From Selaginella moellendorffii (lineage: Eukaryota > Plantae > Lycopodiophyta): 64,000 nucleotides of DNA. The position numbers and the translations under genes were made by a program. The notes beneath the pieces were generated by a model. That model was not told the origin of the DNA and did not search any database. It saw nothing but the letters and a program-made list of their open reading frames with translations. Positions 7,616-26,710 of the stretch are shown piece after piece. Numbering within the stretch: the stretch's first letter is position 1; the number at the start of each line of letters is the position of its first letter. Location of the stretch: assembly GCF_000143415.4 (NCBI RefSeq), contig NW_003314290.1, positions 1,160,932 to 1,224,931 of the forward strand. The letters are read 5' to 3'.

Positions 7616-10600
7616 TCACTTGTCACTCTTTCCCGTGGATCCAAAGGGCTTGGGAGGCTTGGAGAAGTCCTCGTCCGGGAAGTAGTGCCTCCTCATCTCG
7701 TCAATCGAGTTCCACTTGCGAGAGCCGTCGGGAAGAACAAAGCCGCCAGCCTTTGGATCCGGGGCCTTGTACGTTCTCTTTGGCGGCGTGGAGAAATCCT
7801 CGTTTGGGAAGTAGTGCCGCCGCATCTCGTCGATCGAGTTCCACTTCCTGGAGCCGTCGGGGATGACGAATCCACCCGCGCTGGGGTCGGGGGTCTTGTA
7901 AGTCCTGCGTGGCGGCGGCTCGTTATCGCAGTTTGGGAAGTAGTGCCGCCTCATCTCGTCCACCGACGTCCACTTGTTCGTGCCGTCTGGAAGCTTGAAC
8001 TCGGGCATTGGTCCCTTGTTGATCCTGTTTCCAGCAGCAGCTCCTCCTCCTCTGGATGAACCAGCAAAAGAGCTCCTGGTTGCTGGAGATTGCGACGACG
8101 GGGGAGGAGAAGAGGAAGACGCGTAAGGATTTGCTGGCGATGGCGATGGCGATGGAGAAGGATTTGGTGGCGTTTGAGAGCTTGGTGGTGCTGGTGGAGC
8201 GCCAAAGCCATAAGAACTCGCAGGCGTGCCGACGTCTCCACCCAAGTAGCTCGTGCCATATCCAGTTCCAGTGCCAGGTAGAGCCGAGCTTGATACAGTC
8301 TGAGGGGACGAGCTCGAAGTTTGGCCTCCAGTCGAAGCGGTTGGAGTAGCCGATCCAGACAACGACGACGCTAGGGTGGATTCGCCAGAGGCCGGTGTTG
8401 ATGGTGATGATCCCGTTAAAGCTGGCGAAGTTGACGATGATGCTACCAGCGTCGGCTCGCCAGCTGACGAACTACTAGATCCTACTGAAGCTGCCGCTTC
8501 AACACCAGAGCCACTCGCGGAGACTGACGGTCCCGCACTAGATCCAGAACTCTCTGCTGCGATTACCAGCGTCAACAACATTGTATTCAATCTTAGAAAC
8601 CAAATCATACTCAAAGACTATATACCTGATTCAAAACTTGAAGCCGCTCCAGGGGCTGCCGCCTGCGAGCTAGTTGCAGCAGCGCTCTCACTCCCATATC
8701 CCGTGCTCGGGCTTGAAGATGGTGCGCTGCTCCCATATCCCGTGCTCGGGCTGGAAGATGGTGCGCTGTTCCACTCCGTGCTCGGGCTTGAAGATGGTGC
8801 ACTGTTCCACCCCGTGCTCGGGCTCGAAGATGGTGCACTGTTCCACGCCGTGCTGGGGCTCGAAGACGGTGCACTGTTCCACCCCGTGCTCGGACTCGAA
8901 GATGGTGCACTGTTCCACGCCGTGCTTGGGTTCGAAGACGGTGCACTGTTCCACCCCGTGCTCGGACTCGAAGATGGTGCGCTGTTCCACGACGGCGTTG
9001 TCGAGGATCCAAAGTCTGGAGTGCTGCTCGTTTGGTAGCCGCCACTCGTCGAGGACCCAAAGCCCGTAGAGTTTCCTTGGTAGCCTCCCGTCGCTGTGGA
9101 GCCAAACGAGCTTCCTGTGGAGCCTCCCGGATACGAAGAGCTAGGCGTGGTCCCGTATCCGGGCGAGGAAGCTCCAGGATTTCCCCCGAGGAAACTTGTA
9201 GCCGAGAATGGCGTCGTAGAGCTGTCCGGCTCTGTGGATGGCGGCGGCGGTGGCGGCGTTGGAGCGGTGCTCATCCCCTTCCTCCACCCAAAGTCAGTGC
9301 TTGCGTTGGGCGTCGTCGGGTTGCTGTGGTATCTGGGCGTGAAGCCAGGCGAGCTCCTGCCGAATGAGCTTCCGCCACCAAAGGAGCTCCCGCCAAAGCC
9401 GTTGGAGCTACCATAGCCGGTTGAGCTCCCACCAAAGCCCGTCGAAGAGTTTCCACCGAAACCACCGCCAAAGCCACTTCCAGTTGAAGAATTGTCACCA
9501 AAGCCACCCGAAGAAGTCCCACCGAAACCAGTGGAGCCACCAAAGCCGCTTCCAGTCGAAGAACTTTCTCCAAAATTTGTGGAGCCGCCAAATCCGCTTC
9601 CAGTCGAGGAGTTCCCACCGTAGCCCCCACCGAAGGTACTCCCTGCTGACGAGCTTCCACCATATCCGGTTGAAGCATTTCCACCCCAAGAATTTCCCGA
9701 GCTTCCATATCCAGTCGAGGAACCACCTCCACCGTAACCCGTGCCAGAACTAGTAGAACTTCCACCAAAGCCGGTCGAAGAGTTTTGACCATCACCAAAG
9801 CCCGTCGAAGAGTTTTGACCATAGCCAGTCGAGGTGGATGAGTTTCCTCCACCGTAGCCAGTGGACGCGTCTCCAAAACCAGTCGACGTTCCATAACCGG
9901 TCGTGGAGCTCGGGGTTGTGCCAGTCCCATAGCCAGTCGATGCCGGGGACGTTCCGCCAAAGCTTCCATAGCCGGTGGACGCAGAAGAAGTTCCGTATCC
10001 GGTCGACCCAGGCGAGCTATAGCCTGTTGATGGGTTTCCACCATAGCCTCCGGTAGTCGAGGACGTTCCAGCACCATATCCAGTCGAGGGCGTCGTTCCA
10101 GCACCATAACCAGTCGAGGACGTTCCAGCACCATACCCCGTCGAGGGCGTCGTTCCAGCACCATAGCCAGTCGAGGACGTTCCAGCACCATAGCCCGTCG
10201 AGGGCGTCGTTCCAGCACCATAGCCAGTCGAGGACGTTCCAGCACCATATCCGGTCGAGGGCGTCGTTCCAGCACCATAACCAGTCGAGGACGTTCCAGC
10301 TCCATAGCCAGTAGAAGAAGCTCCACTCGCGCCATAGCCACCGCCATAGCCCGTCGACGAGCTCACACCATAGCCACCCGCAGGAGCACCAGCGCCTCCA
10401 GTATAACCAGTGGTCGATGGAGTAGCCGGAGAAGCAGCCGCATCAAAAGTAGTAGCAGGAGCACCACCAAGTCCACCAGAAGCAGCAGCGCTTCCAGTAG
10501 ATCCTCCACCGGATAGAGCATTCGCATCAGCTTCTCCACTAGAAGCAGCCCCTTTCTGGCCAGAATAATCAGCGCCACCGCCAGGAGGAGCCACAGAGCT

Positions 10601-11020
10601 ACCATAGCCCCCACCGGGGTTATCTACGCCACCAGCGCTTGGATTCGCCCATGTCTTCCCAATCCTTTTGTCGATAGAAGAGCTCCCCGTGCTGTAGACG
10701 AAGTTCTTCTTGTCCTCCTCGGTGGCATTGGGATTAATCCAGATGTTGTTGTTGTTGCTCACGCCGCCGCCATAGCCGGGGTTAGAACCAGCTCCAAAAC
10801 CCCCACCACCGCTCGAGGCGCTGCTATCAGCGCTGTATGAGCAGCATCTGGTTCCATACCTCGGATTCGCGAAGAGACGAACTGGTGCTGGCGATGGCGC
10901 CGGAGCTGGAGACCCTAGCACGCTCTTGCGCAATGCCGCGGGGCTCTTCCCCGGCCGGGAGGCAGGGAATGCGGTCGACGGCGCCAAGCTTGGCGCTCCC
11001 AACAGGACCTGGCTCGCCAT
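7616..11020 (-). CDS. Orphan Gly/Ser/Thr-rich low-complexity protein (~1111 aa), probable plastid transit peptide, three C-terminal ~40-aa repeats (protein A)
   Basis: The 800-aa ORF joins the 7616-8614 ORF in frame through a GT-AG intron at 8625-8557. N-terminus is Ser/Ala/Pro/Arg-rich with no acidic residues. Repeats: GYGAGT(T)PST, WNSAPSSSPST, PDGxxKWxS[IV]DEMRRHYFP x3. Confidence 0.8.
8690..9000 (-). repeat. 36-bp coding tandem repeat (WNSAPSSSPSTx), about 8 units
   Basis: Unit gaagatggtgcactgttccaccccgtgctcggactc is repeated. Confidence 0.9.
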
Positions 11021-11114
11021 AGCCTAGGGTTTTAGAAAAAAATATCTTCCAAAAACCCTTATGGTAAAAATTTAAACCTCCTAGTAGGAAAAACTCTAGG
11101 GGTTACCAACATGT

Positions 11115-11187
11115 GACTCCATGGCCCAACGGATAAGGCGCTGGTCTACGGAACCAGAGATTCTGGGTTCGATCCCCAGTGGAGTCG
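11115..11187 (+). tRNA. tRNA-Arg (anticodon ACG)
   Basis: GACTCCA/TGGAGTC acceptor stem, CTGGT-CTACGGA-ACCAG anticodon arm, GGTTCGATCC T-loop. Confidence 0.97.
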
Positions 11188-11649
11188 TTTAATTAAGTAC
11201 TTGTTAACTTGTTAACCTTTTGTTGCTAATTATTTTATTTTCATACAATATTTCAAGTGATGCCGTTTAGTTGCAACTTCGTTCCATGGGCGCTATCAGC
11301 CTACATAAACGCTTGTGAAGCTTAGTGGATATGCAACCTTCTCGCGAGAGGTGGTGACCCTAGGAGTTCTTGAGGGGGAAGCAACTAATTTTAGCTTGCA
11401 AAGACAGCTTTGCCTAAGGAGCGAAGCCCCGGGAAGAAAGCCAGGGAGAAGAAATTAGTGAAGAACGCAGGCCCTGGAGGACTGGAGGAGAAAAATGACA
11501 ACGAAGGCGGGAGGAAAGCAATGAAGAAAAGCCCACAGAGGAGGAAGATGCTTTGGCCGAAATTACGACATAAAGGTACTTGCAAGTTTTTATCCTCATG
11601 TCTTTCGCAAGAAGATTACTGCTTGAGAGGCTAGTGAGAAAACTGGGAC

Positions 11650-13879
11650 CATATTTGTTTGGAATCAGGAGCTCCTCCTACCACCCGAGCTTTTATTCGT
11701 CCGGATCAGGAGGAACGCCAGCGTGTCGACGAGATGGTGGAGGAGCTATTAGCGGATGGAATGGTGGAATTGAGCTCGAGTTCTGGTTCTCAAACCTACC
11801 TCTGCCACCTCATATTCCTGCTATATATAATCGATCCCTCTAGGAGGAGTTTGTGCTGTCTCTTACTTCACCAAGGACATCCCAGAGGAGTTAGGGGCCG
11901 ATGATCTGTTCGAGCTCCAGGAGTTTATTCTCAAGGGAATGTGTTTTTCTATTTCATATGTCTTTCCCTTGACAGAAAATTCCATCCACTTTATTCCAGA
12001 GTTAACAACGATGTTTCCCAGAGTCTGGAGAATGTCAACTCCAAACACCACATTGACGGCCCCCATCTCAAGGACATGGAACGTCCCCTCCATCTGATAT
12101 CCTCCTACCTGTATGTTGCATCGGACCTCCGCCTCTGACAATAAAGTCCCACCATCAGTAATCCCCACAATTAGTGGCCTCGGCAGCAAAGATGTTGTGA
12201 GCTTCAACTTCTGGAGCCAACGTTTGTTGATAAACATATGTGACGCTCCAAAATTGACAACATGAACGCCTCATGCGAATAAATCTTACCTTTAACTCGA
12301 AGGCATTGCGGATGAGCTTTTCCAACAAACATATGCAAGGATCTACTTGATCCTCGGCACTCATACTACGGTCATTTGGCCTCCAGGATAAAGAAATCTC
12401 TCTGAGTGTCCAGTTGCTCTGCGGAGCAAGGAGCCACGGTGCCGTCTTCATAAATGTATTAGCACCACCTTCCCTTTAACTGGACGTTTTGTATACACTT
12501 CTCGATGCCCCTGGAACCAACGTCCTCCATAGTCAAAGCATTTGCCTTCCTTGATGTCGTCCAAGCGCTTAGTTCTGTCAACTGTAGAATGCACTAGTGA
12601 ACTAGTGGACAGGAAATAAACATTGATGAAGTCCGTGATGATGACACCAACGACGGTTTGTTGGTCCACTGGTTCCGTCCTTGGCATAGAGGATCATTCC
12701 ACAATGTCAACCAAGCCTCCAAGGTGCATGGCTTGGCAAACAGTCATTCGTCGCATTTGAGCAACATCAGAGCTCATGCGAGCAGGCAGCGACGCAATAT
12801 ATCGCTGAGTGGGCGCATCCTCCGGAACTCTATGAACGCCGAATCTTGATTTCAACCATGTTTCATTGAACTCTTGTAACTACTGGACCGCAAGATGTAT
12901 CGTAGTGTGAACTTGAGGGTAAATCCGCCACTGCTATTAACACAAACGAGCAGCCTTTTGAATTCTTCCCATGAGGGAGCCATCAAGAGCGTAGTAACCC
13001 CTTTAAGTATATCGATGCGAATGGAACTCTCTTTCGCTTTAGGGTGAAGTACAAAACACCTTTCCCGCATAATGAGTTAATAGGAACCTGTCCTTGTGGA
13101 GCCAACGATCCAGCTCTGGGCTCCGCCGCAGCAATCCACCGCAAGTCCTGAAGAAGCCACGGAGTGCTTCCCTAGGGCCATGATGGACGCCACAAGAAAT
13201 TTGGCGACGGCATCCCCCCAGTCCTGAAATGCCAGGGAATAAACGTTGCCACACTGTACACTGGCACAGCAGTCACGTAAGGTGGTGAACTAGAATTCAC
13301 CCCCGAAGTAGAGGTGAAAGCTGACAGGGGAAATGGGAATGTTGGGACGTTGGCAGCTGGGTCCACAGACACAAGCAAAGGCTGGCAAGAACCCAGACAA
13401 GCCGGAAAGGAGCTTCCTGAAGAGCTGGCATTTCGGCCATAGCCCTCAATTCCCGAACGAGCTGAATACAGGAGGTGCCGAAGACGGAAACTACCAATCC
13501 TCTGGAGCATCCTGGAACACTATCGACTCTTCCTACTCTTGCGAGAGAGAACCAACAATGCCATGGCTGTATCTACCTGAGAACCATAATCAGGATCCCT
13601 TATAGAAAAGAAAAGATCACCCTTTCCTCATACACTTGAAAGAATTGAGCTTGTGTTCTTTTGCAACTCCTCTTGACCTCTGCCACCTCACATCCCTTCT
13701 ATATGTAATTGGTCTCTTACACCTCCCTATTGGCTACGCCACAACACCCCTAGACTGAAATCAACTTTGCTATACATACAAAGCTCGGCTCTTTTATCTT
13801 GATCCCTAGGCACAGTTGGCAGCTGGATGCTATCCACATCTTGTGAGGTTTTCTTTCTACCCTACATTTATCCCCGACA
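11650..13879 (-). mobile_element. Truncated, rearranged Ty3/gypsy retrotransposon (LTR-like end, gag, aspartic protease, pre-RT linker)
   Basis: Minus strand: gag knuckle-like KEGKCFDYGGRWFQGH, protease-like FHVLEMGAVNVVFGVDILQTLG, then PPRGID. Plus strand 11659-11785: LESGAPP..VDEMVEELLADGMVELSSS (pre-RT motif). Candidate LTR start TG at 13879. Many frameshifts and stops. Confidence 0.8.
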
Positions 13880-14849
13880 GAATATTCAAATTTTCATCAC
13901 ATGTACTATAATTGTGTTCCTCAAGCCAGCTGCATATCCACAATCGGGCTCCTAGAAGCCTTGAATTGTTAAACAAGTCGATTAGAACAACAAACGCTAG
14001 TAAACCAGCTAATCACTGATTTGTAGACATCAGTTCCTTCTCGGATCAACCTCCTTCCTCTAAGCAGCAGATTCAAGGCACTCCATCCATTGCGTATAGG
14101 CTTTGAGTGGAATGCCTGCCCAAAATCTTGGCCAGTGGCACTGGCCTTGGTGTATCAACTGGAAATGCCAAAAGAAAAAATATATATGTGTTGTACTCAA
14201 TAATATATCCAGGAATATGCCCAGAATTATACTTATGCTCTAACAATGGCAAGAACCCATAGCTGGAAAAGAATCCAAGTCTAGCACATACAAAGGACAA
14301 AGGATGGATGATGAAAATGGAGATAATAGAGAAGAAATGAGAATAAGGTGTAAACTTTAAAAACACATAGAAAAACCAAAGAAAAACTATAGGGTCAAAC
14401 TAGAATCTGACTATGAGAAAATGGAGAAATGAATAAATGACAAGAGCTTAAAAAAAGAAGGAAGCTAAGTAAAAATGTGTCAAACTGGTTCTAGCTTGAG
14501 AACCATTGCACTAAAGTATCTTTAACTCCCATAATCAACTTTAAATTTAAGTGAAAGAGAAGAAAAGAAGAGTAAAAACAGTTAGCGATATAGTCTCTAT
14601 AGCTATATAGAAGAAAAAGTGGCAGATTATTGATGTTAGCGGATTATCCATGCCAAAAGCTGATGCTTGTTGAGAGAGGTGGAATGAAATAGAAGCACTT
14701 CATAAGACATACCTAGATGCCTCTGTATACAAAGCCCAACTAGATATTGGAAATCTCAATTTGCTACAAAATAAAAAATGTTATGCTATATGTAGAGGAA
14801 AATGAATCTTGAGCGTCATAACTACAGATCATCTTGATGATTAGCTTCA

Positions 14850-15060
14850 ATGTGGAAAATTGCTGAACGTTTACAACAACACAGCATGCCTACAGTTGAT
14901 TATGAATCAAGTACACCATGGGAGGAATAAACACTTCGAAATGTTCCACTATTTCATAGAGAGCGGATTGAAGAGAGGAGGTGAAGCTGAAGTACATTTC
15001 TGCTTACGTCTGTAATTTGCCAGTTTGAATGCTTACAACAACAGCTCGGACTGGTTGCAC
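14850..15060 (+). mobile_element. Degenerate Ty1/copia RNase H remnant
   Basis: LNVYNNTACLQLIMNQVHHGRNKHFEMFHYFIE resembles copia DNxxAIxLxxNPVxHxRTKHIxIxYHFIRE. Confidence 0.7.
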
Positions 15061-15754
15061 AAAGGGAATAGCAATCTGATAACAAAAGTGAGACCCAGTG
15101 TTGGAACAACTAGAAACAGATCACAATACGTGATCAAAGGAAACTTTATGCGTGATTGAGGCGCAACCAAAGGAAAGTTTATGTATATATCCCAAGAGGG
15201 AATTCACCATCAATACTCAAGGATTGTTTTTCTATCACTAGCTGCTCCGTCCATTGTGTGTAGGCTTCAGATGGAATGCCTCTAACTATGACCCTTGTGG
15301 TCGCGAAGTAGTTGCCACCTTCACCTATGGCCGACCACTATCCATTAATCCAAAACCCTTTCTCCGACATGGAAACGCAAGGTTTCACAGCGCCAGAGAC
15401 ACCTCTGGATCTGCATGGTCTGATAAAGACAGTAACTTGTCCTTCTGCAAATGCAATAGGAGTCGACGAAGTGAGAATGCAGATGACACAATAGTGTTTT
15501 GAACTCTGGGGAAGTGAGCTCTTGGTGCTTTGTCTCACGTGGAGTGCGCAATGCATCTCGAAAACGAGCATTCCACACATCCTCTCCATAAGAAAACTCA
15601 GCTCATTCCCTGGATGAAGCAGCAAAAATGTGCGAGAGGCCGCCGAATTCGTCGCCTCAGACGGCATTACTCTTCCAAGTCTCTTGTTGATAATCTCATG
15701 TTAATTAATCTTACTTATTAATTAACACAAAATATTTTTGTAGTTTTCATTTTT

Positions 15755-18700
15755 TCAGCTCCTTTGACGATCACCTTGATCGTTTGGAGTCGAGTTTCCA
15801 GCTTCATAGCCACGAGAAGAATTCTGGTCAGGCGCGTTATAATCGCGGCCATACCCGGGAGAGTTTTGAGAAGCCGCTCCATAGCCGCTGGAGCCATAGC
15901 CGCCACCTTGGGACGAGTTGCCACCATAGCCATACGAGGAAGGAGCTTGACTGGATCCATACGAGCTTTGAGAGCCTCCATAGCCAACACCCCCAGATGA
16001 AAATCCTGTTCCTGTGTTTGGTGTGCTTGAACCATACCCATTGCCGGGATTTCCACCGTAGCCGCCACTAGCATTGTTGGTGGAGGCAGAGTTGCCATAG
16101 CCGTAGTTAGTCCCAGCAGCCGAAGGAGAATTGCCATAACCGTAGTTGCCGGAAGTTCCATAGCCAGTGTTCCCAGCCGACGCACCATAGCCAGGTTGAG
16201 ATGGAGCACCATATCCTCCTCCGGTTGAGGAACCGTATGAAGGAGTTGTGGCACCGGTTGATCCTCCCGAGCTCCCGGCACCTTTCCTCCAGCCATAGTC
16301 AGTCCCTGCGTTGGGAGTCGTCGGGTTGGCATTGTAGCCTCGAGCTCCGCCAAATGATGTTTCTCCAAAGCCACTCGACGAATTTCCTCCAAATCCAGTC
16401 GACGAGTTCCCTCCGAAACCACTAGAAGACGTTCCACCGTATCCAGTGGATGGAGACGTTCCACCATATCCAGTAGATGAGGACGTTCCACCATAGCCAG
16501 TGGAGGAACCAGAACTTGCACCAAAGCCCGCTCCATTGTATCCAGTGGATGAACCGGAGGTTCCACCGTAGCCAGTCCCGCCGTAGCCTGTGGAGGAACC
16601 AGCATTTCCACCAAAGCCAGTGGAAGAGCCAGTGGCGTAGCCAGCATCCCTGCTGTTGGAACCGTAGCCAGCGTCCCTGCTGTTGGAGTTGGACCACGAT
16701 CCAGATCCACCGTAGTTTGAAGAGTTACCGAAAGTGGAACCGTTGTTTCCACCATAGCTTGGAGAGCTATAGTTTCCTGACCTGTTGCCATACGAGGATC
16801 CGGATCCACTGTTATAGGATGACCCCCCATAGCTCGAGCCTTCACTTCTACCATAACCACCTCCACTGTTGTATGAGGAACCATAACCGGAACCAGTGCG
16901 ACTTCCTCCATATGAAGAACCTCCAAAGGACGAGCCACCCCTGTTGCCATAAGATGAACCGCCGCCGTACGAGGATCCGCCACTCCTAAATCCTCCACCG
17001 AAGCTCCTTCCTCGACTGAATGATGACTGGAAGTAGTCTTCTTGTAAATCGGGAAGCTGCCAAACCGCTTGTCAGGAACAAACAGCAAGAAACATAAATA
17101 TGTACTTACAACTTTTACAGCAGTGAGAACATTGCTTCCGACATTTTGAAGTGCAAGAATCTCCTTGGCAAGATCTTCTGGAAGATCGAACACCCCTCCG
17201 GTGGCCTGTTCACGCGGTCAGAAAAAAACATGCAGAAAGATAGAAACATACCGTCGAACTCGAAAGCATTGTAACTCTTCCCATGCTCATTCCTGCTTTG
17301 GAGCTAAGTTGCATTACAGCTGACGAGACCGCACTTGAGTCAATCAAATTTCCACCGGTCAGCTGCAAAGTCATGTATCCCTGCAGCGAACACCGTTAGT
17401 TCCACGATGAGAACAACAAGATTAATTACCTCCTCGTATGTCAAGAGAGATCGTTTGGGAGGGAGTTGAGTAACACCGCTAACATGGGCCATAGCTGCTG
17501 CAAGAGCGTTAACGCCCTGCTCTTCCAGTAGTTTTTGCGCAGCAGGCAGAAAGAGCTTTGCGAGATCCGGGTGCACGCTTTTGATCGACTCCGACGCATG
17601 ATCAGAAGAACTGGCAAGTACATCCTCAGCCGCAGGCGGGCCTATAGCTTCAAATTTGCAGCCAACTTCGCTTTCAATCGTGCGTAGGACCCTCTTTTGA
17701 TTAAGAGTATACATAAGTATACAGGTCCCCTTCTTGCCCGCTCGGCCTGTTCTTCCGGATCGATGAACGAAAGTTTCCGAATCTCCGGGAACCTCGTAAT
17801 GCACAATCTAAAGTAATAACTTGTTAAAACAAGGCCTCGCAGAGACAAAGTTCACTTACGAGATCCACATTTGGAATGTCAAGCCCCCGAGCTGCAACAT
17901 CCGTTGCGACTAGAACGTTGAATCTCCCGTCACGGAACCCACTCAGGGTCTTCTCTCTTTGGTACTGAGAAATATCCCCATGCAAGGCTTCACAACCAAT
18001 GGAACGGCTCATCACAGCAGCAACATCGTCCGTATCTCTCTTCGTCTTCGTGAATACTATGGCTTTGCCTCCTTTCGCATAGACCTGTAAGTAAATATTA
18101 TTTATACAAGTCCCAGTCATTAAAGTCGACAAACCGTGAGAAGATCGGCCAGAAGTTTGTTTTTTGCGAGGTCATTTGTAGAAACTGCATAGAGCTTGAT
18201 TCCTTCAGCAACTTTATCCTCATTTTCACCGACCTGTTCTTCGGAGTGTCAGAAAACGAACAAGTCAAATGATACACTTACCAGGTCTATCATTGTTGGA
18301 TTCTTAAGATACTTGCTTGTTAAGTTCCTTATCCAGCTCGGCATTGTCGCGGAGAAAAGCATGGTGTGACGCTGAAGCGGCAACTTTTGCATGATTCTCT
18401 CGACCTCCTCGGCAAAACCAACAGCAAGCATCTGATCCGCTTCATCCAGGATCGCAAACTTCACTTCGTTCAGTCTCAAGTCGCCCCTCTCAAGCATGTC
18501 GATGACTCGGCCGGGAGTTCCCACCACCACTTCAACACTGGATGCTAGTTGCCTTCGTTGGCCTTCGATACTAACACCACCATAGATGCAAACCACAGAT
18601 AAGTGTGGAGCTGCGAGCACAAGCTCGTTCTCAACTTGTTTCGCGAGCTCCCTAGTTGGTGCCAGAATGATTGCTCGTGGAGTTCCCGCTGGTCTGGATT

Positions 18701-19304
18701 CAAAGAAAAACAAAATCAAGCATTGTGTAGTACGATGTCAGGCTCACCTGAATTGCATACTACTCTTTTCCCTCGATATGTTATCCAGGATTGGAATCCC
18801 AAAGGCCAGCGTCTTGCCAGTTCCTGTCTTTGCTCGAGCGATGAGATCGAGTCCTTGCATTGCCGGTTGAAAGACAGCTCTCTGGAACAAAACAATGAAA
18901 ATTAACGACGTAGGGAATTAGATCTCACATACCTGGATAGGAAACAAATTCACAATGCCCCTCTTGGCAAGGGCGTCCACAATCCTGCTGTCGATGCCCA
19001 AGCTCGCAATAGCGAGCTCCTCGCTCGCGCTGGCATTCCCTGCCGAGAATGATGGACTGTCGCTGGTGACAGTAAACCCGGACAAGCTAGCCACGAGGGG
19101 CCTGCTACCGGCGCCATTGCCCAGGCAAACGATCTTGGCCGGGGCAGGGGCCGCGGAGGAAGAATGCCGGAGGATTACGATTGGCGGCCCTAGCAGCGGG
19201 AAACTCACACTCTTGCTGAAGACGCCGGCGCTCCCGAGCTTGGACGCTGCCGCCGACGATGGCGCTGGCGACGCGGAGGCAATGCTGCCAAGGACGCTCG
19301 CCAT
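15755..19304 (-). CDS. RH3: DEAD-box RNA helicase, RH3-like (plastid-targeted, GUCT region), with a ~430-aa Gly/Ser/Tyr-rich C-terminal tail
   Basis: Motifs [43 protein letters not shown]; GUCT-like [13 protein letters not shown]. The last exon 17056-15755 (434 codons, phase 0) is open in a frame missing from the ORF track and ends ..QGDRQRS*. Confidence 0.92.
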
Positions 19305-19613
19305 TCCTTTGCCCTAATCCAATCCTCCGTCGCTCATCCAAAGCCCGTCTGGGCGAGATCTTTCATTCAAGGCACACAAGTGCTCCACATCAAGGGTTTT
19401 ACAAATATCTGGATGGGGAATATCCAGAGTTGATTCTATAGTCAAACTGTTGTTGACTAGCCCTAAAAGGTTGCCTAGAGTTGACTAAAGGAAGAAAGCT
19501 CTCTTCCTTTTTGTTTATCGTTTAGTGCGACTCCCAGATGCTGTGCCGTTGGCAAGCGAGAATCCTCACGCATTCTCGGCCATTCTCTCGATGATCTCGC
19601 CTTTTTTTTCGAT

Positions 19614-20201
19614 CTAGATCACAAGCAGCAAGGCCAAAAGCCCCAAACTCGTGGGAAGAGCGGGCCCGTGACGCGCCCCAAAATCTGGGAAAGAAGACCG
19701 CGCGGACGACGAGGGCGATGAGAAATCCGATGCTACCGATTGCGAGCTGGAGGCCACTGACGCATAGATCGCCACTTTCATGCCCGTGATGCAATGCCCC
19801 GGGATCCCGCAGATGAAAAAGTTCTTGCGCGCCGCCAGGGTGATCGCCCGCCCGCTCAACAAGCCCTGGACTGGATTGTGAATGTTGCACAGCACGTAAT
19901 CGATCTCGTTCACCATCAGCACCGAGTGAGATCCGCTGAAAACAAACACTGTTCCCGAAACCCAAGATCAATCAAAGACTGCCCATGGAATGAAAATCGC
20001 TCGGATTCCTCTTATCATTCGCGAAGAGCTCTTACCGACGCTATCGCCCAATGCGAACGGGTACTTGGCCGCCCATTGAGTGTAATTCACGTTGAGATTC
20101 CAACCCAGATTGTCGCCCACCTTGTAGAGTGCCGCGCTCGCTGCGAATCGCACCCAAAACCCAAGAACAAGGCCAAGAACAAGGGATAGAAATCGACCCA
20201 T
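19614..20201 (-). CDS. Phytocyanin (blue copper, plastocyanin-like domain) with signal peptide and probable GPI anchor
   Basis: YKVGDNLGW..YTQWA..GDSV|VFVF..HSV..C..FFICGIPGHCITGMKV; ligands H, C, H, M intact; hydrophobic C-terminus. Confidence 0.92.
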
Positions 20202-20419
20202 ATCACTCGCACGCTCGTGCTCGCTCGATCGAGGCCACTATTCACGACCTTTTTCATCTCGATGGACTTCCGTGCAAGCAGATTCACTAAAAAATCACAC
20301 AAATTCCATTCCATAATTCCAAGAACAGGGTTTCCAGTATGTTACATTTCTCCGTTTGGAGAAGAGGGAAGAACAACAAAGACATGGTATTCACAATGGA
20401 ATTCCATTCGCCACGATTT

Positions 20420-20794
20420 CTATTGCGTGGCCAGGCGCGAGGCGATCGAGGAGTGGTACATCGTGTCGTGGTGGGCATCCAAGCCCTTAAGCCGCTGGCG
20501 AAGGATCCTGAATTTGTCCGAGGTGTTCTTGGCTGCTAGATCTACATTTGGAGCGAGTTCCTTGGCATCGTCTTGCGCAGCCCAGTCCTGCTGCTGCGAC
20601 GAGGAGGAGAAATTGAAGAGAGGACTCCACCACGCCTTGCCCTTTGCGGTGCTGCTGCTAATCAGATCCATCACTGCATCCTTTTGTGAGGACGAAGAAG
20701 CCACAGACAAAGATGGAGAGGAAGATCTAATTCTCTGCTCACTACCACGAGCGCGGATCGACGCAACTGGGACGAAGCTCGCGATCGCCGCCAT
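20420..20794 (-). CDS. Small conserved plant protein of unknown function (WWxPLF...HDxMYHSxIASRLA family)
   Basis: Intact 124-aa ORF with KAWWSPLF and HDTMYHSSIASRLA, recalled from a conserved land-plant small-protein family. Confidence 0.8.
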   Translation of the reverse strand: MAAIASFVPVASIRARGSEQRIRSSSPSLSVASSSSQKDAVMDLISSSTAKGKAWWSPLFNFSSSSQQQDWAAQDDAKELAPNVDLAAKNTSDKFRILRQRLKGLDAHHDTMYHSSIASRLATQ

Positions 20795-21028
20795 TCCTTT
20801 TCTCTAGCTAGGTATGCGCGCTTCTTTAGGATAAGAACCCTCGCTTCTTTATAGCACTTTTCCCGTGACCTTTTCCCACGGGGATATTCTCAAAATATCC
20901 CCAGGATCCGGCGCATATACTCTTGCGCCACGTTGACCTAAACCTGGGCTTTTCGATTCCCGCGTTTGTCGTTATTTAAAAAACTGGCACATTCGCAGGG
21001 ATATACCTTATCCACGGAGAGTTCCGTA

Positions 21029-21788
21029 CTAGGCTTTCTGGATGCTTGGATCGCCGTTGCCCTGGCACTTATCGACGGTGGCGGAGAGCTCGTACGGAGA
21101 GGTGTCCGTGGCGAGCCACTGCTCGATGGTGAAGAGGCGCTGGGAACAGCCGAGATGCGGGCCCGTGATGCTCACCTCGGCGTAGTTGACGTACCAGCCG
21201 TGGTGGCTGCCGGATCCATCCGAGGTGAGGACGAGCTTGCAAGGGGTGGTGCTCAGGCAGGAGCCGCGGCCGCTAAACACGTCTAGATTGCCGCGCTCGA
21301 AGTAGTTCCAGCCGCTCGGCATCAATCCGCCCCATGTCTCGATGTTGTCGATGGTCAGGCTGTTGTTGTAGGTGTCGATGAGCTCCACGCTCATGTTGGC
21401 GTCGGATCCGCCCTTGAAGATGCTGCCGGTGCGCACGTAGATCGTGTAGACACAGTTCCCGAGCTGGAACACACCGAGACGATGAGGAATTTCGAAAGGA
21501 TTGTCCAAGAAGTGGAGAAGAGAGACCGAAATATCGATCGAAAGATATCCAGACAGCCAACCGAGAGAGAAGAGATCGAGAAGAGAGGAAGATCCAGAGC
21601 GAAATATCGGCCAGGGCTTAGAACAAGAGATCGAGAGGAAAGGGATTGCTACTTCAAGAAAAAACGCTTACCGATTCGGAGTTTTGCGCTCTAGATCCCG
21701 CGAATGCTGCCGCGGCCGGATTGGAGAGCGCTATCGCCAGCGCCAGCGCCGATGCGACGATCGAAAGCCCCCACATTAGAGTCCACAT
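21029..21788 (-). CDS. PLAT/LH2 domain protein (PLAT1/2-like), secreted
   Basis: Signal-peptide exon, then CVYTIYVRTGSIFKGGSDA..WGGLM..YFERGNLDVFSGRG..SDGSGSHHGWY..F.IEQWLATDTSPYEL. Confidence 0.93.
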
Positions 21789-21984
21789 TGGAAAAAGGCG
21801 AGGATGGATCGATCGACAGCACGAGAAGAATGTGGGCGCTTCAATGTGACGAATCGATGCCCTCAAATATCATAGAGCCAGTCAAATAAAGAGGCATCTC
21901 GTCGGCATCCGCTTGTAAGAATCTTTTTTAGTTTTTCCTTTACCATTCATACGAGGAGTTTTACCTCGCTAGGGTTCTTGGGAG

Positions 21985-23319
21985 ATGCTGCATTGTTCTC
22001 CCTTCGTGTCTCCAACGGTTGGAAGCGCTAGGGTTTGCCGGATTGGATTGCTAGCGGTCGCGAGCTCCTCGATTTTGCAGCGGAGGGGATTCAGGAGTCT
22101 TGCCGCCGCTGCTGCGAGCTTGGAGGCCGAGGTCGAGGAGGATTTCACTCCTCAATCTGGGGAGAAGAAGAGATTGCCGCACACGCCCGTCCTAGTGAGG
22201 CAATTCCTGGAGCATTTCGAAGGAAGAAGCGTCAAAACCTTCTTGGATTGCACTGTGGGAGCTGGAGGCCATGCTTTCGAGGTAACAACTCGATTGTCAA
22301 TAGAGCAATGGTAGTGAATTACACTCCATCCTTGCAAAGATTATCCAAGCGCATCCGGAGCTGGAGACGTTCGTGGGAATGGACGTTGATCCCTGCGCGC
22401 TCAAGCTGGCGAGACAAAGATTAAGCGATCTCTCAGGTAGCATGGCGAAGGTGGATCTTTTCCATGCCAATTTTAAGAACATGAAGAAGGATCTCAAAGA
22501 ACGAAATCCTGAGCTCTTGGAGCGGGGCTTCGATGGGATTCTTTTGGACCTGGGACTTTCGTCAATGCAGGTAAGCCGTGAATGCCAATCTTTCTAGTTT
22601 TCACTTCCTTTTCCAGGTTGACGCTCCCGAGCGAGGCTTTAGCTACTACTTGGATGGACCTCTGGACATGAGAATGGATTCGAGTGTAAGTCTATTTCTT
22701 CATCGTGATAGAGATCTCACGGGAACTTGCTTGCAGGATGTTCTTGGGCTCACCGCGGAAGCCATTTGCAACAACTGGTCCGCCGCTGAGATTGGCCGCA
22801 TCTTGCGAGAGTATGGCGAGGAGATGCGGTGGAAGTTCCTGGCGAGCCGGATCGTGGACGCGCGGCTCAACGGCGGGATCAAAACAACGAAAGATCTCGC
22901 CAGCGTTGTTGGAGGAAGATTCACTTCAGGTAAGGCCTTACACACACCACTCGTGGAACTCATATTTTACTTCTCTCCTACCGGCAGGGAGATTCAAGAG
23001 AGCCAGGCACCCGGCAGCTCGGACGTTCCAAGCGCTGAGAATCGCCGTGAACGACGAGCTCAAGTCACTGAGGTCCGCCATCGGGCACGCGAGCAGCTGC
23101 CTGGCTCCCGGTGGTCGCCTGGCGGTGATTTCTTTCCACAGCCTCGAGGATCGCATCGTCAAGTACCAGTTCAAGGAGCTGTCGCTGGTGTTCGACAAGG
23201 CGGACTTGGCGTTCATGCTGCTCACCACGAGCCCGATCACGGCCGACGCCGCGGAGATCGAGAAAAACTCCCGGTGTAGGAGCGCCAAAATGCGAGTGAT
23301 CCAGCGGCTATGCCAATGA
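21985..23319 (+). CDS. rsmH: 16S rRNA m4C methyltransferase RsmH/MraW, organelle-targeted (copy 1, canonical)
   Basis: 5 exons; HTPVL, DCTVGAGGH, GILLDLGLSSMQ, ERGFS..DGPLDMRM, YGEE, FQALRIAVNDEL, ISFHSLEDRIVK, NSRCRSAKMR. Confidence 0.95.
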
Positions 23320-23357
23320 AAGAAAGCTTTCGTCTCGTCCAAGCTTGCACAAGAGTT

Positions 23358-23386
23358 TGAGGTTTAGGGTTTAGGGTGTAGGGTTT
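23358..23386 (-). promoter_or_regulatory. Telo-box / telomere-like TTTAGGG repeats upstream of protein B
   Basis: tttgaggtttagggtttagggtgtagggttt in the 94-bp intergenic gap; AAACCCTA telo-boxes are typical of plant translation/ribosome-related promoters. Confidence 0.55.
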
Positions 23387-23413
23387 TTGGGCAGGGAGGA
23401 CAGCGAGCGAGCG

Positions 23414-25029
23414 ATGGCGGCGAGGCGGCTGATCGTCTTGGGCGCTGGGAAGCTCTGTCGCGGTAGCGCGGCGGCTTCCAAGATCGCCAATCCATCGGCA
23501 TTGGTGCTCGTTCATCACAATTCCACTTTCAACAGCGATGGAGGTAATGGTTCTGTGCCTGGCGGAGGCGGCGGTGGCTATGGGGTTGGGGGCGGCTATG
23601 GCGTGAGCCCTCCCCCACAGGGCAGCGGTGGAGGTAACGGTGGCTACAGTGCTGGAGGATATGGCGTTGGCGGCGGTGGTGGCTCGACTCCTGGTGGAGG
23701 AAGCGCGGCGCCACCATACGGTGGCGGAGGCTCTCCTCCTTCTGGTGGAGGTGGCGGTGGCTACGGCGTTGGCGGAGGCTCTAGCGCGGCTCCACCATAT
23801 GGTGGCGGAGGATCTCCTCCTTCTGGTGGAGGTGGCGGTGGATACGGCGTTGGCGGTGGCTCTAGCTCAGCTCCTCCATACGGTGGCGGAGGTTCTAGCT
23901 CGGCTCCTCCATACAGTGGCGGCGGATCTTCTTCTAGTGGCTACGGCATGGGAGGAGGATCAAGCTCGATTCCTCCATACGGTAACGGGGGCTCTAGCTC
24001 GACTCCTTACGGAGGTCCTTATGGCGGTGGAGCCGGCAACGTTCCTCGATCAAGCAACTCCACCACCTCGGTTCCTTTTCCAAGCAACAGTAGCGGATCA
24101 ATTCCTCCCTATGGTGGATCAGGCAACTCCACCCCTCCCTATGGTTCTTCTCCGAGCAACAACAGCGGATCCATGCCTCCATACGGTGGATCAAGCAACT
24201 CCACCACCTCGGTTCCTCCGTATGGATCTCCTCCGAGCAACAACAGCGGATCCATGCCTCCATACGGTGGATCAAGCAACTCCACCACCTCGGTTCCTCC
24301 GTATGGATCTCCTCCGAGCAACAACAGTGGATCCTTTGGTGGATCTTCCAGCAACTTTAACAACAGTAGCAGCTCAATCCCTCCCTTCGGTTCTTCCAAC
24401 AGCATGAACAACAACAACAGTAGCAGCTCCATCCCTCCCAATGGTTCTTCCAGCAACATCAACAACAACAATAGCAGCTCCATCCCTCCCTTTGGTTCTT
24501 CCAGCAACACCAACAACAGCAGCAGCAATAGCAGCGGCATTCCTCCGTATGGTTCTCCCAACAACAGTGGAGGCAATCCTTATACTGGCGGGGCCGTGAA
24601 CACAAACATGCCACCGTATGGGAATCAAGCCGGTGCAAGCAACAACTCGTCGAGCCCTCCATTCGGCGGTAGCGGTGGTAACTTCAACACGAATCCCCGA
24701 GCCGGAAAGACTTGGCCGAATCCAAACGCTTCGTCGTCTCCTCCGCCACCATCTTACTCTGGAGGAGGACGCAGGTGAAGCTTTTTCTCTTTTCTTTTTC
24801 TTTCTTTCACTCATCGCTCTTGGTTTACTTGCCCAGGGGAAATCCACATCCGACTGTTCCGAATCCTTGGTACCGCGACGCGAATGGAAACTATCCCAAC
24901 ATGGATCCAAACAATCCTCCCAAGCCGCTGCCTGGAGCGACCAAGTACGCGGGTGGAACTTATGGCGAGGGACGGCCACGCACCATCATCGACGACATGA
25001 GGAAGAAATACTTCGGCGAGGATTGGTGA
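23414..25029 (+). CDS. Orphan Gly/Ser/Pro/Asn-rich low-complexity protein (~517 aa), probable mitochondrial presequence (protein B)
   Basis: ATG 23414 (MAARRLIVLGAGKLCRGSAAASK); intron 24775-24836 joins in frame to GNPHPTVPNPWYRD..TIIDDMRKKYFGEDW*; PPYGG repeats including an 81-bp near-perfect duplication. Confidence 0.82.
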
Positions 25030-25273
25030 AGCGAGCCATCCGAGGATGAGAATCGTCGAGGTAAAAGCTAGTTCTCTACATAGATCATCGTGTTTAGAGC
25101 TTCTCTTTCGAGATACTTCGTTACTTGTTTCTGCTCAGGTAGTCGAGTGATTTAGAAAGAAGACAAAAAGCAATCGAATTGTAACTTCTCTCTCTCTCGT
25201 GGATCCAAGAAAAGAAGGTGATGTTTCGATGAATCGATCGAATAAACTGGTGAGGGTGTTGAGATAATCTCTA

Positions 25274-26710
25274 ATGCCCTTGACAATGATCAAGCGATGG
25301 TACAGGAACCTCGCAGCGATTTACTCGCCAGTGATGATCAATCCGGTGCTCCAACACTTAAAGCCGAATCGCCTAGAAACGTTTGTGGATTGCACGCTGG
25401 GAAACGGAGCTCACGCGTTCGAGGTAATGGCTCCATTCTCTTTTGATCAAAAGAAACATCGCTCTCTTTCTTTCTCCACAGATCATACGGACCCATCCCG
25501 AGCTCCGGCAAGTTGTGGGATTGGATCTAGACCCCGACGCGGTGTTGCTGGCCAGACCCAAGTTGGAAGCCGCCGCTGCGGGGAATGCCCACCTCCGCCT
25601 CCACTTTGCCAGTGTCAACTTTAAGTGTCTCAAGCTCCAGCTCAACCAGATCGATCCGGGCTTGCTCCAGCGAGGGGTGGACGGGATCTTGATGGTGTTG
25701 GGTCTCTCCGCAATGCAGGTAGAAGATTTTCCTTGGCATGCATAGCATGGAAACCGTTCTTCTTCTTGAGTTTCATGGTTGGATTTTGTGATGACCTCCT
25801 TTCTTGCTCTAAAATGCGCCATTGTCTCCACTTTCTTCTTGGCTGAATTGTTTGTTTTCCTTCTACGTGGTTCTGGTTCTTAGACTCTTTTTCCGAGTTC
25901 TTGCGTTTTTCTTCCTGATGAATTTGAAGTGATTTTGCTCTTGAGTTCTTGGTTTTCGCTTTTGCATCATAATCTCTTCTTGCTAGTGGAAAGAATAAAG
26001 AAAACCATGCCACCATCTTTGCAAGCTTTCTTTTTTCCAGCTTAACACTCCCGAGAGAGGCTTCAGCCACACCATGGACGGCCCTCTGGACATGCGATTC
26101 GATCGACGCTCCCGGATGACAGCCGAGATCATCCTCAACTCGTGGAACGAGCGCGAGCTGGGACGACTACTCCGGGACTACGGCGAGGAGCAACACTGGC
26201 AAGAGCTCTCTCACTCCATCGCCGAGACCCGGCTCAAGAAAGGGCCCTTCAAAACCACGCTCCAGCTCGTCAACTTCATCGGTAAGATCTCTCCTTGGCC
26301 AAGCTCCTCCATTTCTTCTTCTTCACTTTGCGAAGCTCTTCCATTTCTTCTTCTCTATAGATCGCAGGAAACAAAACCTTGGATCCAAGCCACCGAGATT
26401 CGAGGACGAGCATCCCGCGCTGCCAACGTTCCAGGCCCTGAGAATCGCCGTGAACGACGAGATCAACACGCTCAAGATCGCCGTACCCCAGGCGGCCTCG
26501 TGCCTGGCGCCCGGCGGCTCTCTCATCGTCATCACCTCTTACGGTCTGGAGGACCGGATCGTGAGCGGCGAGTTCCAGCGCCTGGACAAGCGGGTCCTGG
26601 AGAGCGAGTTCCAGATCGCCCACGTCCGCCCCATCGAGGATCTCTCGCAGCAAATCTCCAGCCAGAGGTCGCAGATGCGAGTGCTCCAAAGACTCTGGAA
26701 GAGAACGTAG
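25274..26710 (+). CDS. Divergent RsmH/MraW paralog (copy 2) with altered catalytic motifs
   Basis: 4 exons, open frame; DCTLGNGAH, ERGFS..DGPLDMRF, YGEE and FQALRIAVNDE are retained, but YSPVM, GILMVLGLSAMQ and ITSYGLEDR are altered. Start uncertain. Confidence 0.85.

What the first reader, a model, noticed from the sequence alone, without database searches (positions are those of the whole stretch)
7616..26710. Candidate new system: three clustered low-complexity organellar proteins linked by shared short motifs, interleaved with organellar rRNA-processing enzymes
Seen: three non-repetitive motifs are shared pairwise between otherwise different genes. (1) YHSNPTTPNASTDFGWRKG in protein A (9276-9332, minus) vs [19 protein letters not shown] in the RH3 helicase tail (16281-16337, minus); both follow [12 protein letters not shown] runs. 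(2) KRIGKTWANPSA in A (~10635-10670) vs PRAGKTWPNPNA in protein B (~24695-24730). (3) S[IV]DEMRRHYFP x3 at the C-terminus of A vs TIIDDMRKKYFGEDW at the C-terminus of B. The motifs are conserved islands inside divergent low-complexity sequence. Established: RH3-type helicases act in plastid rRNA maturation and group II intron splicing, and RsmH methylates organellar SSU rRNA. Inference: A (plastid-like presequence) and B (mitochondrion-like presequence) are paralogous scaffolds with docking motifs. With RH3 and the two RsmH copies they may form an organellar RNP/condensate module built by local duplication and exon shuffling. I do not recognise these motifs from any named family.
Basis: partly seen in the sequence, partly recalled or inferred. 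Interest (0 to 1): 0.88.

Follow-up and report, generated by a model that had tools for sequence, protein, structure and literature searches.

The report
Selaginella orphan low-complexity proteins sharing motifs
Three neighbouring Selaginella genes (two expressed orphan glycine/serine/tyrosine-rich proteins and the long tail of a chloroplast-type RNA helicase) really do share short sequence islands, but these are best read as traces of local duplication, and nothing tested shows a working module.

Summary
The window is Selaginella moellendorffii scaffold GL377594.1. All three motif pairs exist, one base off the stated coordinates, and all exceed chance. Motif 1 (A and the RH3 tail) has z about 17. 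Motif 3 (A and B) has z about 6. Motif 2 is the weakest, reached by 1 of 200 local shuffles.

The gene models hold. Protein A (1111 aa) is transcribed, and RNA contigs confirm its 69-nt intron. B (517 aa) and RH3 with its tail (1048 aa) match the NCBI models. The other haplotype keeps every motif and shows only in-frame indels.

No Pfam family, solved structure or protein among 1.84 billion representatives matches A's C-terminal 43-aa module. Those blanks are weak evidence, because A is not annotated and a search for B missed B itself.

The motif 1 island is the non-repetitive end of a 170-260 nt block shared by A and the RH3 tail. Its synonymous sites are not saturated. It therefore looks like fairly recent duplication or gene conversion, with repeat turnover scrambling the flanks, and selection on a docking site is not needed to explain it.

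The "organellar RNP/condensate module" has no support here. RsmH-2 lacks a presequence, and unrelated genes, a tRNA gene and retroelement debris lie between the members.

Verdict: a real, lineage-restricted, modestly interesting gene-birth locus.

The parts
7616..11020 (-). Gene A, 1111 aa. Exon 1 is 8626-11020, the intron 8557-8625 (GT..AG), and exon 2 is 7616-8556 including the stop codon.
   Evidence: ORFs; splice sites read; model built. RNA contigs show a joint 8556|8626 skipping 69 nt in runs X1 and X15. Depth is near zero in the flanks 7300-7433 and 11186-11300.
10634..10669 (-). Motif 2 in A (KRIGKTWANPSA), A residues 118-129, just after the presequence-like N-terminus.
9278..9445 (-). 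Block of A homologous to the RH3 tail. It runs from STGFGG-type repeats into motif 1 (YHSNPTTPNASTDFGWRKG, 9275-9331).
   Evidence: BLASTP E = 1e-8. blastn finds 48 nt at 87.5% identity plus collinear hits upstream. Shuffle z about 17.
7655..8020 (-). Three tandem 43-aa units (129-nt period) at A's C-terminus, each holding ..LPDGxxKWxS(I/V)DEMRRHYFP.. (motif 3).
   Evidence: Tandem Repeats Finder, period 129, 2.5 copies; alignment A1. A single-sequence AlphaFold2 model predicts a beta-hairpin plus a short helix per unit, at pLDDT of only 60-75.
15755..19304 (-). RH3/Hera-type DEAD-box helicase gene with nine exons. The last exon (15758-17056) encodes a 433-aa Gly/Ser/Tyr tail with no cysteine.
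   Evidence: DEAD and Helicase_C domains. Best solved relative is Thermus Hera over the whole of exon 6. Exon landmarks and phases. The NCBI model is 1048 aa, against about 1045 aa summed from my exons.
16283..16402 (-). Block of the RH3 tail homologous to A, ending in motif 1 ([19 protein letters not shown], 16280-16336).
   Evidence: Identical on the other haplotype.
23414..25029 (+). Gene B, 517 aa. Exon 1 is 23414-24774, the intron 24775-24836, and exon 2 is 24837-25029.
   Evidence: Splice sites read; model built. Same span and 517-aa product in the NCBI annotation. RNA runs from at least 7 studies hold 0.63-0.76 of its words.
24695..24730 (+). Motif 2 in B (PRAGKTWPNPNA), placed after B's low-complexity region.
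24892..25026 (+). Stretch of B exon 2 that aligns to one full A unit (YPNMDPNNPPK...IIDDMRKKYFGEDW); it includes motif 3.
   Evidence: BLASTP E = 1e-3, 17 of 44 identical. Between haplotypes it has 0 non-synonymous and 3 synonymous differences.
21985..23319 (+). RsmH-1 (MraW/Methyltransf_5), 390 aa, with a presequence-like N-terminus. It is a neighbour only, with no sequence link to A, B or the tail.
25274..26710 (+). RsmH-2, 330 aa. It starts inside the methyltransferase domain with no presequence and has GNGAH where RsmH-1 has GAGGH. It is a neighbour only.

Best explanation
This is a lineage-restricted locus in Selaginella moellendorffii where low-complexity coding sequence has been duplicated and exchanged between neighbouring genes.

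Shown here:
- A and B are real, expressed orphan genes.
- Each encodes a presequence-like N-terminus followed by hundreds of residues of nearly uncharged Gly/Ser/Thr/Pro/Asn sequence with evenly spaced Tyr/Phe/Trp.
- A ends in three 43-aa units. B ends in about one diverged unit.
- RH3 is an ordinary Hera/RH3-type DEAD-box helicase whose last exon encodes a 433-aa Gly/Ser/Tyr tail.

Inferred:
- A and B are old paralogs. They share motif 2 and the C-terminal unit in the same order, but their low-complexity regions grew at different places.
- A and the RH3 tail share a younger block of 170-260 nt, copied by local duplication or ectopic gene conversion between same-strand repeats 4.7 kb apart.
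- The "conserved islands" are the non-repetitive pieces of these copies. They stay alignable while the repeats around them are reshuffled by slippage, as the in-frame repeat-unit indels between the two haplotypes already show.

Likely mode of action (inference from composition only): the products are intrinsically disordered sticker-and-spacer proteins that self-associate. A may co-associate with the similar RH3 tail if both reach the plastid. The C-terminal hairpin-plus-helix units of A would then be a threefold binding site for an unknown partner. Adjacency of the RsmH genes is coincidental.
For: Identity of the locus and gene models.

Transcription:
- A is transcribed and its intron is spliced out; flanks have near-zero depth.
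- B's words are held by RNA runs from many studies.

Motif significance.

A and the tail share more than the motif:
- 27 shared 6-mers against 3.4 expected.
- The same order of STGYG-type repeats, then STGFG-type repeats, then motif 1.
- Collinear blastn hits.
- In motif 1, 10 of 14 conserved residues that have synonymous alternatives use the same codon. The copy is therefore not ancient (own count).

Haplotype comparison:
- All indels in the tail and B are multiples of 3 (3, 6, 18; 6, 6, 81, 3, 3). One of them removes a whole 27-aa unit of B.
- pN/pS is 0.44 (tail), 0.42 (B exon 1) and 0.24 (A N-terminus). B exon 2 has 0 non-synonymous and 3 synonymous changes.

Composition:
- Aromatic spacing has CV 0.27-0.45 against 0.9 in shuffles (none of 1000 shuffles as even).
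- Charged residues make up 0.3-7%.

No relatives of the module in Pfam, the PDB, the ESM Atlas or 1.84 billion representative proteins.
Against: - Motif 2 is short and only marginally above chance (1 of 200 local shuffles). The A-B unit alignment has E = 1e-3 for a single comparison, so A-B paralogy rests on weak signals plus collinearity and adjacency.
- The introns of A and B are in different phases (1 and 2) and are not alike, so a shared gene structure is not shown.
- The presequences are not alike.
- The direction and age of the A-tail exchange are unknown; no outgroup species could be read.
- Even aromatic spacing follows automatically from tandem repeats.
- Self-association, localisation and any partner are untested.
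- The tail's splice to RH3 and B's splice rest on annotation, exon phase and my recollection of the Arabidopsis RH3 junction.
Confidence: 0.6

Rival explanations
1. A (plastid) and B (mitochondrion) are scaffold proteins whose shared islands are docking motifs. Together with RH3 and the two RsmH enzymes they form an organellar RNA-processing or condensate module, and clustering reflects shared function.
For: - Presequence-like N-termini on A, B, RH3 and RsmH-1.
- FUS-like sticker-spacer composition of A, B and the RH3 tail.
- A carries three copies of a putatively folded mini-unit, a typical multivalent design.
- B exon 2 shows 0 non-synonymous against 3 synonymous changes between haplotypes.
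- RH3 and RsmH/CMAL both act in plastid ribosome biogenesis in angiosperms (PMC7102989 for CMAL; RH3 from my own knowledge of Asakura et al. 2012).
- A is highly represented in RNA contigs.
Against: - No interaction, co-expression or localisation data exist.
- Gene order in plant nuclear genomes rarely reflects function.
- Unrelated genes, a tRNA gene and transposon debris sit between the members.
- RsmH-2 has no presequence.
- RsmH shares no sequence with A, B or the tail.
- Synonymous sites in motif 1 are unsaturated, so its conservation needs no selection.
- The exon carrying the triple unit has 3-10 times lower depth than exon 1.
Confidence: 0.12
2. A and B are ordinary glycine-rich structural or stress proteins (cell wall or cytosolic), not organellar. 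The shared islands reflect descent only and have no link to RH3's function.
For: - Gly is 20-24% of A and B.
- B has PPYG-type repeats and one SPPPPSY string, reminiscent of wall proteins.
- B's N-terminus has a short hydrophobic stretch after MAARR, with a maximum 9-aa Kyte-Doolittle mean of 1.9. That could also serve as a signal peptide.
Against: - A's N-terminus (MAS..., Ser/Ala/Pro-rich, no acidic residue, no strong hydrophobic core) looks like a transit peptide, not a signal peptide.
- No targeting predictor could be run.
Confidence: 0.2
3. The motif 1 island is kept at the nucleotide level in both mRNAs, for example as a shared small-RNA target or RNA element, not for the peptide.
For: 48 nt at 87.5% identity with mostly identical codons, inside flanks that cannot be aligned.
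Against: - The amino-acid changes inside the island (H/N, S/A, S/G, F/Y) sit beside synonymous changes, as expected of plain divergence.
- Homology extends upstream into the repeats.
- No RNA family or structure was tested or suggested.
Confidence: 0.03

Closest known systems
Prion-like [G/S]Y[G/S] low-complexity domains of the FET proteins (FUS, EWS, TAF15) and hnRNPA1
   Same: - Gly/Ser/Thr-rich and almost uncharged.
- Tyr/Phe are evenly spaced: 40-50 [GST][YF][GST] triads in A and in the RH3 tail, spacing CV 0.27-0.45.
- By analogy this predicts self-association or phase separation.
   Different: - No RRM, RGG box or zinc finger.
- Presequence-like N-termini suggest organelles, not the nucleus.
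- The repeats are young tandem units.
- There is no sequence homology; the similarity is compositional only.
Arabidopsis/maize RH3 (chloroplast DEAD-box helicase; relative of Thermus Hera and animal DDX21)
   Same: - DEAD and Helicase_C core.
- Hera-like region after the core.
- Transit-peptide-like N-terminus.
- A Gly-rich tail that starts right after the ...LP(P/D)LQ(D/E)D junction.
(the Arabidopsis junction is from memory.)
   Different: - The tail is 433 aa of Gly/Ser/Tyr repeats with no cysteine, so it cannot hold the CCHC zinc knuckle that I recall in the short Arg/Gly/Ser tail of Arabidopsis RH3.
- It carries a block shared with the neighbouring orphan gene A.
Plant glycine-rich proteins (GRPs)
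   Same: High glycine content in (GGX)n/GYG-type repeats, lineage-specific repeat expansion, high expression.
   Different: - GRP classes are defined by a signal peptide, RRM/cold-shock domains or Cys-rich ends, none of which is evident here.
- A and B end in an undescribed unit.
Repeat-linker proteins with short binding motifs (EPYC1 of the Chlamydomonas pyrenoid, CsoS2 of carboxysomes)
   Same: - A disordered protein carrying several copies of a short, locally structured motif separated by flexible linkers.
- CsoS2-M and other tandem short-repeat proteins were among the nearest, low-scoring feature neighbours (0.51-0.63).
   Different: No sequence relationship and no known partner. The Atlas scores are far below the level that indicates kinship.
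Pfam DUF6890 (PF21830)
   Same: Three partial hits to MRRHYFPxED sum to 28 bits, above the 23.6-bit cutoff.
   Different: Only profile positions 1-10 of 44 are matched in each unit. A single unit scores 11.8 bits (E = 0.21). It is not a member.

Membership tests
RH3/Hera-type DEAD-box helicase | DEAD (RecA1) and Helicase_C (RecA2) domains | tested here: met
   PF00270 E = 2.4e-30 on exon 3; PF00271 E = 1e-20 on exon 5.
RH3/Hera-type DEAD-box helicase | Hera/DDX21-like extension after the core (dimerisation/GUCT-type region) | tested here: inconclusive
   Exon 6 aligns end to end with Thermus Hera residues 102-223 (E = 6.5e-17). The GUCT Pfam model was not detected on the short separate exons 7 and 8.
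RH3/Hera-type DEAD-box helicase | C-terminal Gly-rich tail with a CCHC zinc knuckle, as recalled for Arabidopsis RH3 | tested here: not met
   The tail is Gly-rich but has no Cys in its 433 residues.
RH3/Hera-type DEAD-box helicase | Plastid localisation | not testable with these tools
   Only a transit-peptide-like N-terminus: no acidic residue in the first 60 residues, 11 Ser/Thr in the first 45.
RsmH/MraW 16S rRNA m4C methyltransferase (PF01795) | Methyltransf_5 domain | tested here: met
   Both copies hit PF01795 on several exons. Annotated products are 390 and 330 aa.
RsmH/MraW 16S rRNA m4C methyltransferase (PF01795) | Intact SAM-binding glycine motif and an organellar presequence | tested here: inconclusive
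   RsmH-1 has GAGGH and a presequence-like N-terminus. RsmH-2 has GNGAH and no presequence.
Pfam DUF6890 | Match over the 44-position profile | tested here: not met
   Only positions 1-10 are matched in each of three units.
FET-type prion-like low-complexity domain (works-like, not homology) | Uncharged G/S-rich sequence with evenly spaced aromatic residues | tested here: met
   spacing CV 0.27-0.45 against 0.9; charged residues 0.3-6.7%.
FET-type prion-like low-complexity domain (works-like, not homology) | Attached RRM, RGG and zinc finger of FET proteins | tested here: not met
   No Pfam domain in A or B.
Plant glycine-rich proteins | Glycine-rich repeats | tested here: met
   Gly is 20% of A, 24% of B and 30% of the tail.
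Plant glycine-rich proteins | Signal peptide or RNA-binding domain that defines the GRP classes | tested here: inconclusive
   No RRM or CSD domain. The N-termini look like presequences, not signal peptides, but no predictor was available.
Phage fibre beta-propeller-like 44-aa repeats (hits P0001, P0003, P0005) | Homology over the unit beyond the LPDG hairpin | tested here: not met
   phmmer E = 2.6e-11 arises from five stretches of repeat matched against repeat. The DEMRRHYF helix has no counterpart. The hits carry phage fibre gp80 and Laminin_G_3 domains.

The most novel reading that the evidence does not exclude
Selaginella evolved its own organellar condensate scaffolds. A is a plastid FUS-like protein that co-condenses with RH3 through the homologous sticker-spacer block. 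It recruits a client through its three hairpin-helix units. B is the mitochondrial counterpart. That would give a lineage-specific, protein-scaffolded RNA-processing body inside organelles.
Probability: 0.1. Interest if true: 0.8.

Novelty: new variant of a known kind. Interest (0 to 1): 0.38.

Why it matters
If the evolutionary reading holds, the locus is a clear example of two processes:
- Repeat-rich coding sequence spawning new expressed genes.
- Pieces of such sequence being swapped between neighbours, including into an essential helicase.

It also shows how "conserved motifs" in low-complexity proteins can arise without selection.

If A and B are imported into organelles, they would be rare candidates for prion-like scaffold proteins in plastids and mitochondria. 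That could be tested directly with GFP fusions and in vitro droplet assays.

It also flags an annotation gap. A is unannotated or fused to RH3 in the public gene sets, although it is abundant in RNA data.

Tried and rejected
1. Homolog searches.
- The A region around motif 1, B exon 1 and B exon 2 all returned nothing.
- B's own annotated 517-aa protein was not returned either, so these blanks are unreliable for low-complexity queries.
- phmmer of the A module against 1.84 billion representatives gave only phage-fibre repeat hits, one fungal-looking chance hit (P0004), and P0002. P0002 is a rearranged pseudogene fragment of A elsewhere in the genome.

2. DUF6890: a partial 10-residue match. 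Rejected.

3. PDB profile search of the unit: only PDGTEKW hairpins of PQQ-type and designed propellers. Not homology.

4. A resemblance, recalled from memory, of LPDG..W.S..EM..HYF to the C-terminal half of methyl-CpG-binding domains. No Pfam MBD hit at E up to 10. Dropped.

5. ESM Atlas feature searches for the module and for B exon 2: best scores 0.63-0.67, uninformative.

6. A common origin of the presequences or 5' regions of A, RH3 and B: not significant.

7. A degenerate motif 1 in B (RRGNPHPTVPNP): not significant, p = 0.33-0.65.

8. Exact look-up of A's 800-aa exon-1 ORF as an annotated product: not on record.

9. The AlphaFold2 model of the module has pLDDT 60 and pTM 0.21. No fold search was run on it because matches would be meaningless.

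10. Codon-position counts of haplotype differences in the tail (6, 7, 11) do not by themselves fix the reading frame. The other long frame of the tail (491-aa ORF) was rejected on exon phase and on the LPDLQED junction.

11. Literature searches found no description of these proteins or of a long RH3 tail.

Full report
**Where the window comes from.**
- A 448-aa single-exon product of the window and a 122-aa one are exact products on Selaginella moellendorffii GCA_000143415.2, scaffold GL377594.1.
- The window also holds a microbial-type terpene synthase ORF, which I recall as typical of this genome.
- A 124-aa product of the window led to scaffold GL377575.1. This is the second haplotype of the same locus, about 97% identical and collinear down to window position 10304.

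**The observation.**
- In shuffle tests, motif 1 scores 127 against 62 +/- 3.5, and motif 3 scores 79 against 57 +/- 3.8. No shuffle reached either value.
- Motif 2 is weaker: 71 against 53 +/- 4.8, reached by 1 of 200 local shuffles.
- BLASTP with composition adjustment gives E = 1e-8 for A against the RH3 tail over 56 columns.
- It gives E = 1e-3 for A's repeat unit against B exon 2 over 44 columns, and E = 6e-3 for the motif 2 region.
- In the 64-kb window, the only Gly/Ser/Tyr-rich open frames and the only occurrences of the motifs are in these three genes.

**Gene model of A.**
- A is 11020-8626 plus 8556-7616 on the minus strand, 1111 aa.
- Contigs of four RNA runs cover it at depths of tens to thousands. 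The flanks 7300-7433 and 11186-11300 are near zero.
- A joint that skips exactly 8557-8625 (GT..AG on the minus strand) is present in two runs.
- Two other runs hold intron-containing contigs. Intron retention would end the protein at 800 aa, with a stop at 8618-8620.
- Exon 2 has 3-10 times lower contig depth than exon 1 in all four runs. I cannot explain this; a short major isoform is possible.

**Gene model of B.**
- B is 23414-24774 plus 24837-25029, 517 aa. It has the same span and length as the NCBI model.
- RNA runs from at least seven studies hold 0.63-0.76 of its words.
- Its splice was not checked with reads.

**Gene model of RH3.**
- RH3 has DEAD and Helicase_C domains. Its best solved relative is Thermus Hera.
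- Nine exons with consistent phases sum to about 1045 aa, against 1048 aa annotated.
- The last exon starts at 17056 with LPDLQEDYF.... From memory, this matches the ...KLPPLQDD... junction of Arabidopsis RH3. That fixes the frame containing motif 1 and rules out the other long open frame of this repeat-rich DNA.
- The tail has no cysteine, so it holds no zinc knuckle.

**Annotation of A.**
- A itself seems unannotated. No protein in 1.84 billion representatives holds its C-terminal module.
- On the second haplotype, a 2244-aa model starts at the RH3 start codon and is still running at the end of L003, which by then covers the start of A'. The RNA depth gives no sign of read-through.

**What the proteins look like.**
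- *A:* a Ser/Ala/Pro-rich N-terminus without acidic residues; motif 2 at residues 118-129; a Tyr block (STGYGAGT units); a Phe block (STGFGG units); motif 1 at 564-582; a Trp block (eight 12-aa units); a Ser/Pro-rich stretch; then three 43-aa units.
- *B:* an Arg-rich N-terminus; about 380 aa of GGYG/PPYG/N-rich repeats; motif 2; then about one diverged unit.
- *Aromatic spacing:* aromatic residues are far more evenly spaced than in shuffles (CV 0.27-0.45 against 0.9), and charge is nearly absent. This is the pattern of prion-like sticker-spacer domains, but it also follows from tandem repeats.
- *The unit:* a single-sequence AlphaFold2 model gives each unit a small hairpin (LPDGxxKW) and an 8-residue helix (DEMRRHYF), at pLDDT of only 60-75.

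**Is it a known family?**
- No. Pfam gives nothing except a 10-of-44-position partial match to DUF6890.
- The PDB gives only PDGTEKW propeller hairpins.
- The Atlas gives low scores.
- phmmer gives phage-fibre repeats whose E-value comes from repeat matched against repeat.
- phmmer also returned P0002. This is part of a rearranged, partly inverted copy of A's 3' end, 84-90% identical, on scaffold GL377609.1. It is a pseudogene fragment.
- The word-based homolog searches were blank. They missed B's own annotated protein, so they say little.

**How the sharing arose.**
- A and the tail share much more than motif 1. They have 27 common 6-mers against 3.4 expected.
- They also show the same order of STGYG units, then STGFG units, then ..SFGG..Y..NPTTPNA.TD.GWRKG.
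- Collinear blastn hits span 170-260 nt.
- Inside motif 1, 10 of 14 conserved residues with synonymous choices use the same codon, against about 5 expected if saturated (my count).
- The copy is thus older than the haplotype split (pS 0.03-0.04) but not ancient.
- Between haplotypes, the tail and B already differ by in-frame indels of 3-81 nt, including a whole 27-aa unit. The helicase core is 99.2-99.8% identical.
- The simplest reading is that the unique islands stay alignable while the repeats around them turn over. No selection on the islands is needed, and none is excluded.
- pN/pS of 0.24-0.44 and strictly in-frame indels show that the low-complexity parts are translated and mildly constrained.
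- A-B similarity is much weaker and therefore older.
- Their introns differ in phase, and their presequences are unrelated.
- B has no significant motif 1, so the direction of the A-tail exchange stays open.

**The proposed module.**
- Nothing beyond adjacency ties the RsmH genes to A, B or RH3.
- RsmH-1 has a presequence-like N-terminus. RsmH-2 starts inside the methyltransferase domain and has GNGAH in place of GAGGH.
- Between the members lie a tRNA-Arg gene, decayed retroelement pieces, a phytocyanin gene, a PLAT gene and a 124-aa gene.
- RsmH/CMAL acts in plastid ribosome biogenesis in Arabidopsis (PMC7102989). RH3 does so too (my own knowledge). This shared theme is the only, and a weak, argument for a functional cluster.

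**Verdict.**
- The evolutionary part of the interpretation (local duplication, piece exchange) is supported.
- The functional part (docking motifs, RNP/condensate module) is untested and unnecessary to explain the data.
- A and B are genuine, expressed, lineage-restricted low-complexity proteins with an undescribed C-terminal unit. That makes them a modestly interesting target for localisation and phase-separation tests.

Noticed in passing
window 11114-11188 (+): A tRNA-Arg(ACG) gene lies 94 nt upstream of A's start codon on the opposite strand. Contigs from other copies of this tRNA explain the many loose ends at 11107-11192 in the RNA lay-out.
   Followed up: partly
window 7540-8556 versus 8951-10900: Exon 2 of A has 3-10 times lower RNA contig depth than exon 1 in all four runs. 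Intron-containing contigs exist in two runs. A short 800-aa isoform (stop at 8618-8620) may be the major product.
   Followed up: partly
L001 11390-12531 (GL377609.1): A rearranged, partly inverted copy of A's 3' part, 84-90% identical, lies within the span of an RRP12-like gene. It is annotated as parts of a 405-aa and a 294-aa gene and is probably pseudogene debris.
   Followed up: partly
L003 11496-20375 (GL377575.1, second haplotype): The public annotation has a 2244-aa model that starts at the RH3 start codon and is still running at the end of the locus, which by then covers the start of A'. It is probably a false fusion of RH3 and A. On the window's own scaffold RH3 is 1048 aa and A seems unannotated.
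   Followed up: partly
window 25274-26710 (+): RsmH-2 lacks any presequence and has GNGAH where RsmH-1 has GAGGH in the SAM-binding loop. It may be cytosolic or a decaying duplicate.
   Followed up: partly
window 24070-24334 (+) versus L003: B is 517 aa on this haplotype and 488 aa on the other. The difference is one whole 27-aa repeat unit plus small in-frame indels, so this is a repeat-length polymorphism within one plant.
   Followed up: yes
window 11300-15500: Decayed retroelement pieces (weak RVP_2 hit) lie between A and RH3. This stretch is the most rearranged part between the two haplotypes (84-95% identity, one inverted piece).
   Followed up: partly
window 19614-20794 (-): On this scaffold the 124-aa gene and the phytocyanin (Cu_bind_like) gene are annotated as one 270-aa product. 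On the other haplotype they are two genes of 124 and 169 aa.
   Followed up: no
window 35364-36674 (-): A microbial-type terpene synthase ORF (Terpene_syn_C_2), which I recall as typical of Selaginella. A DUF7138 gene lies at 32587-33930.
   Followed up: no
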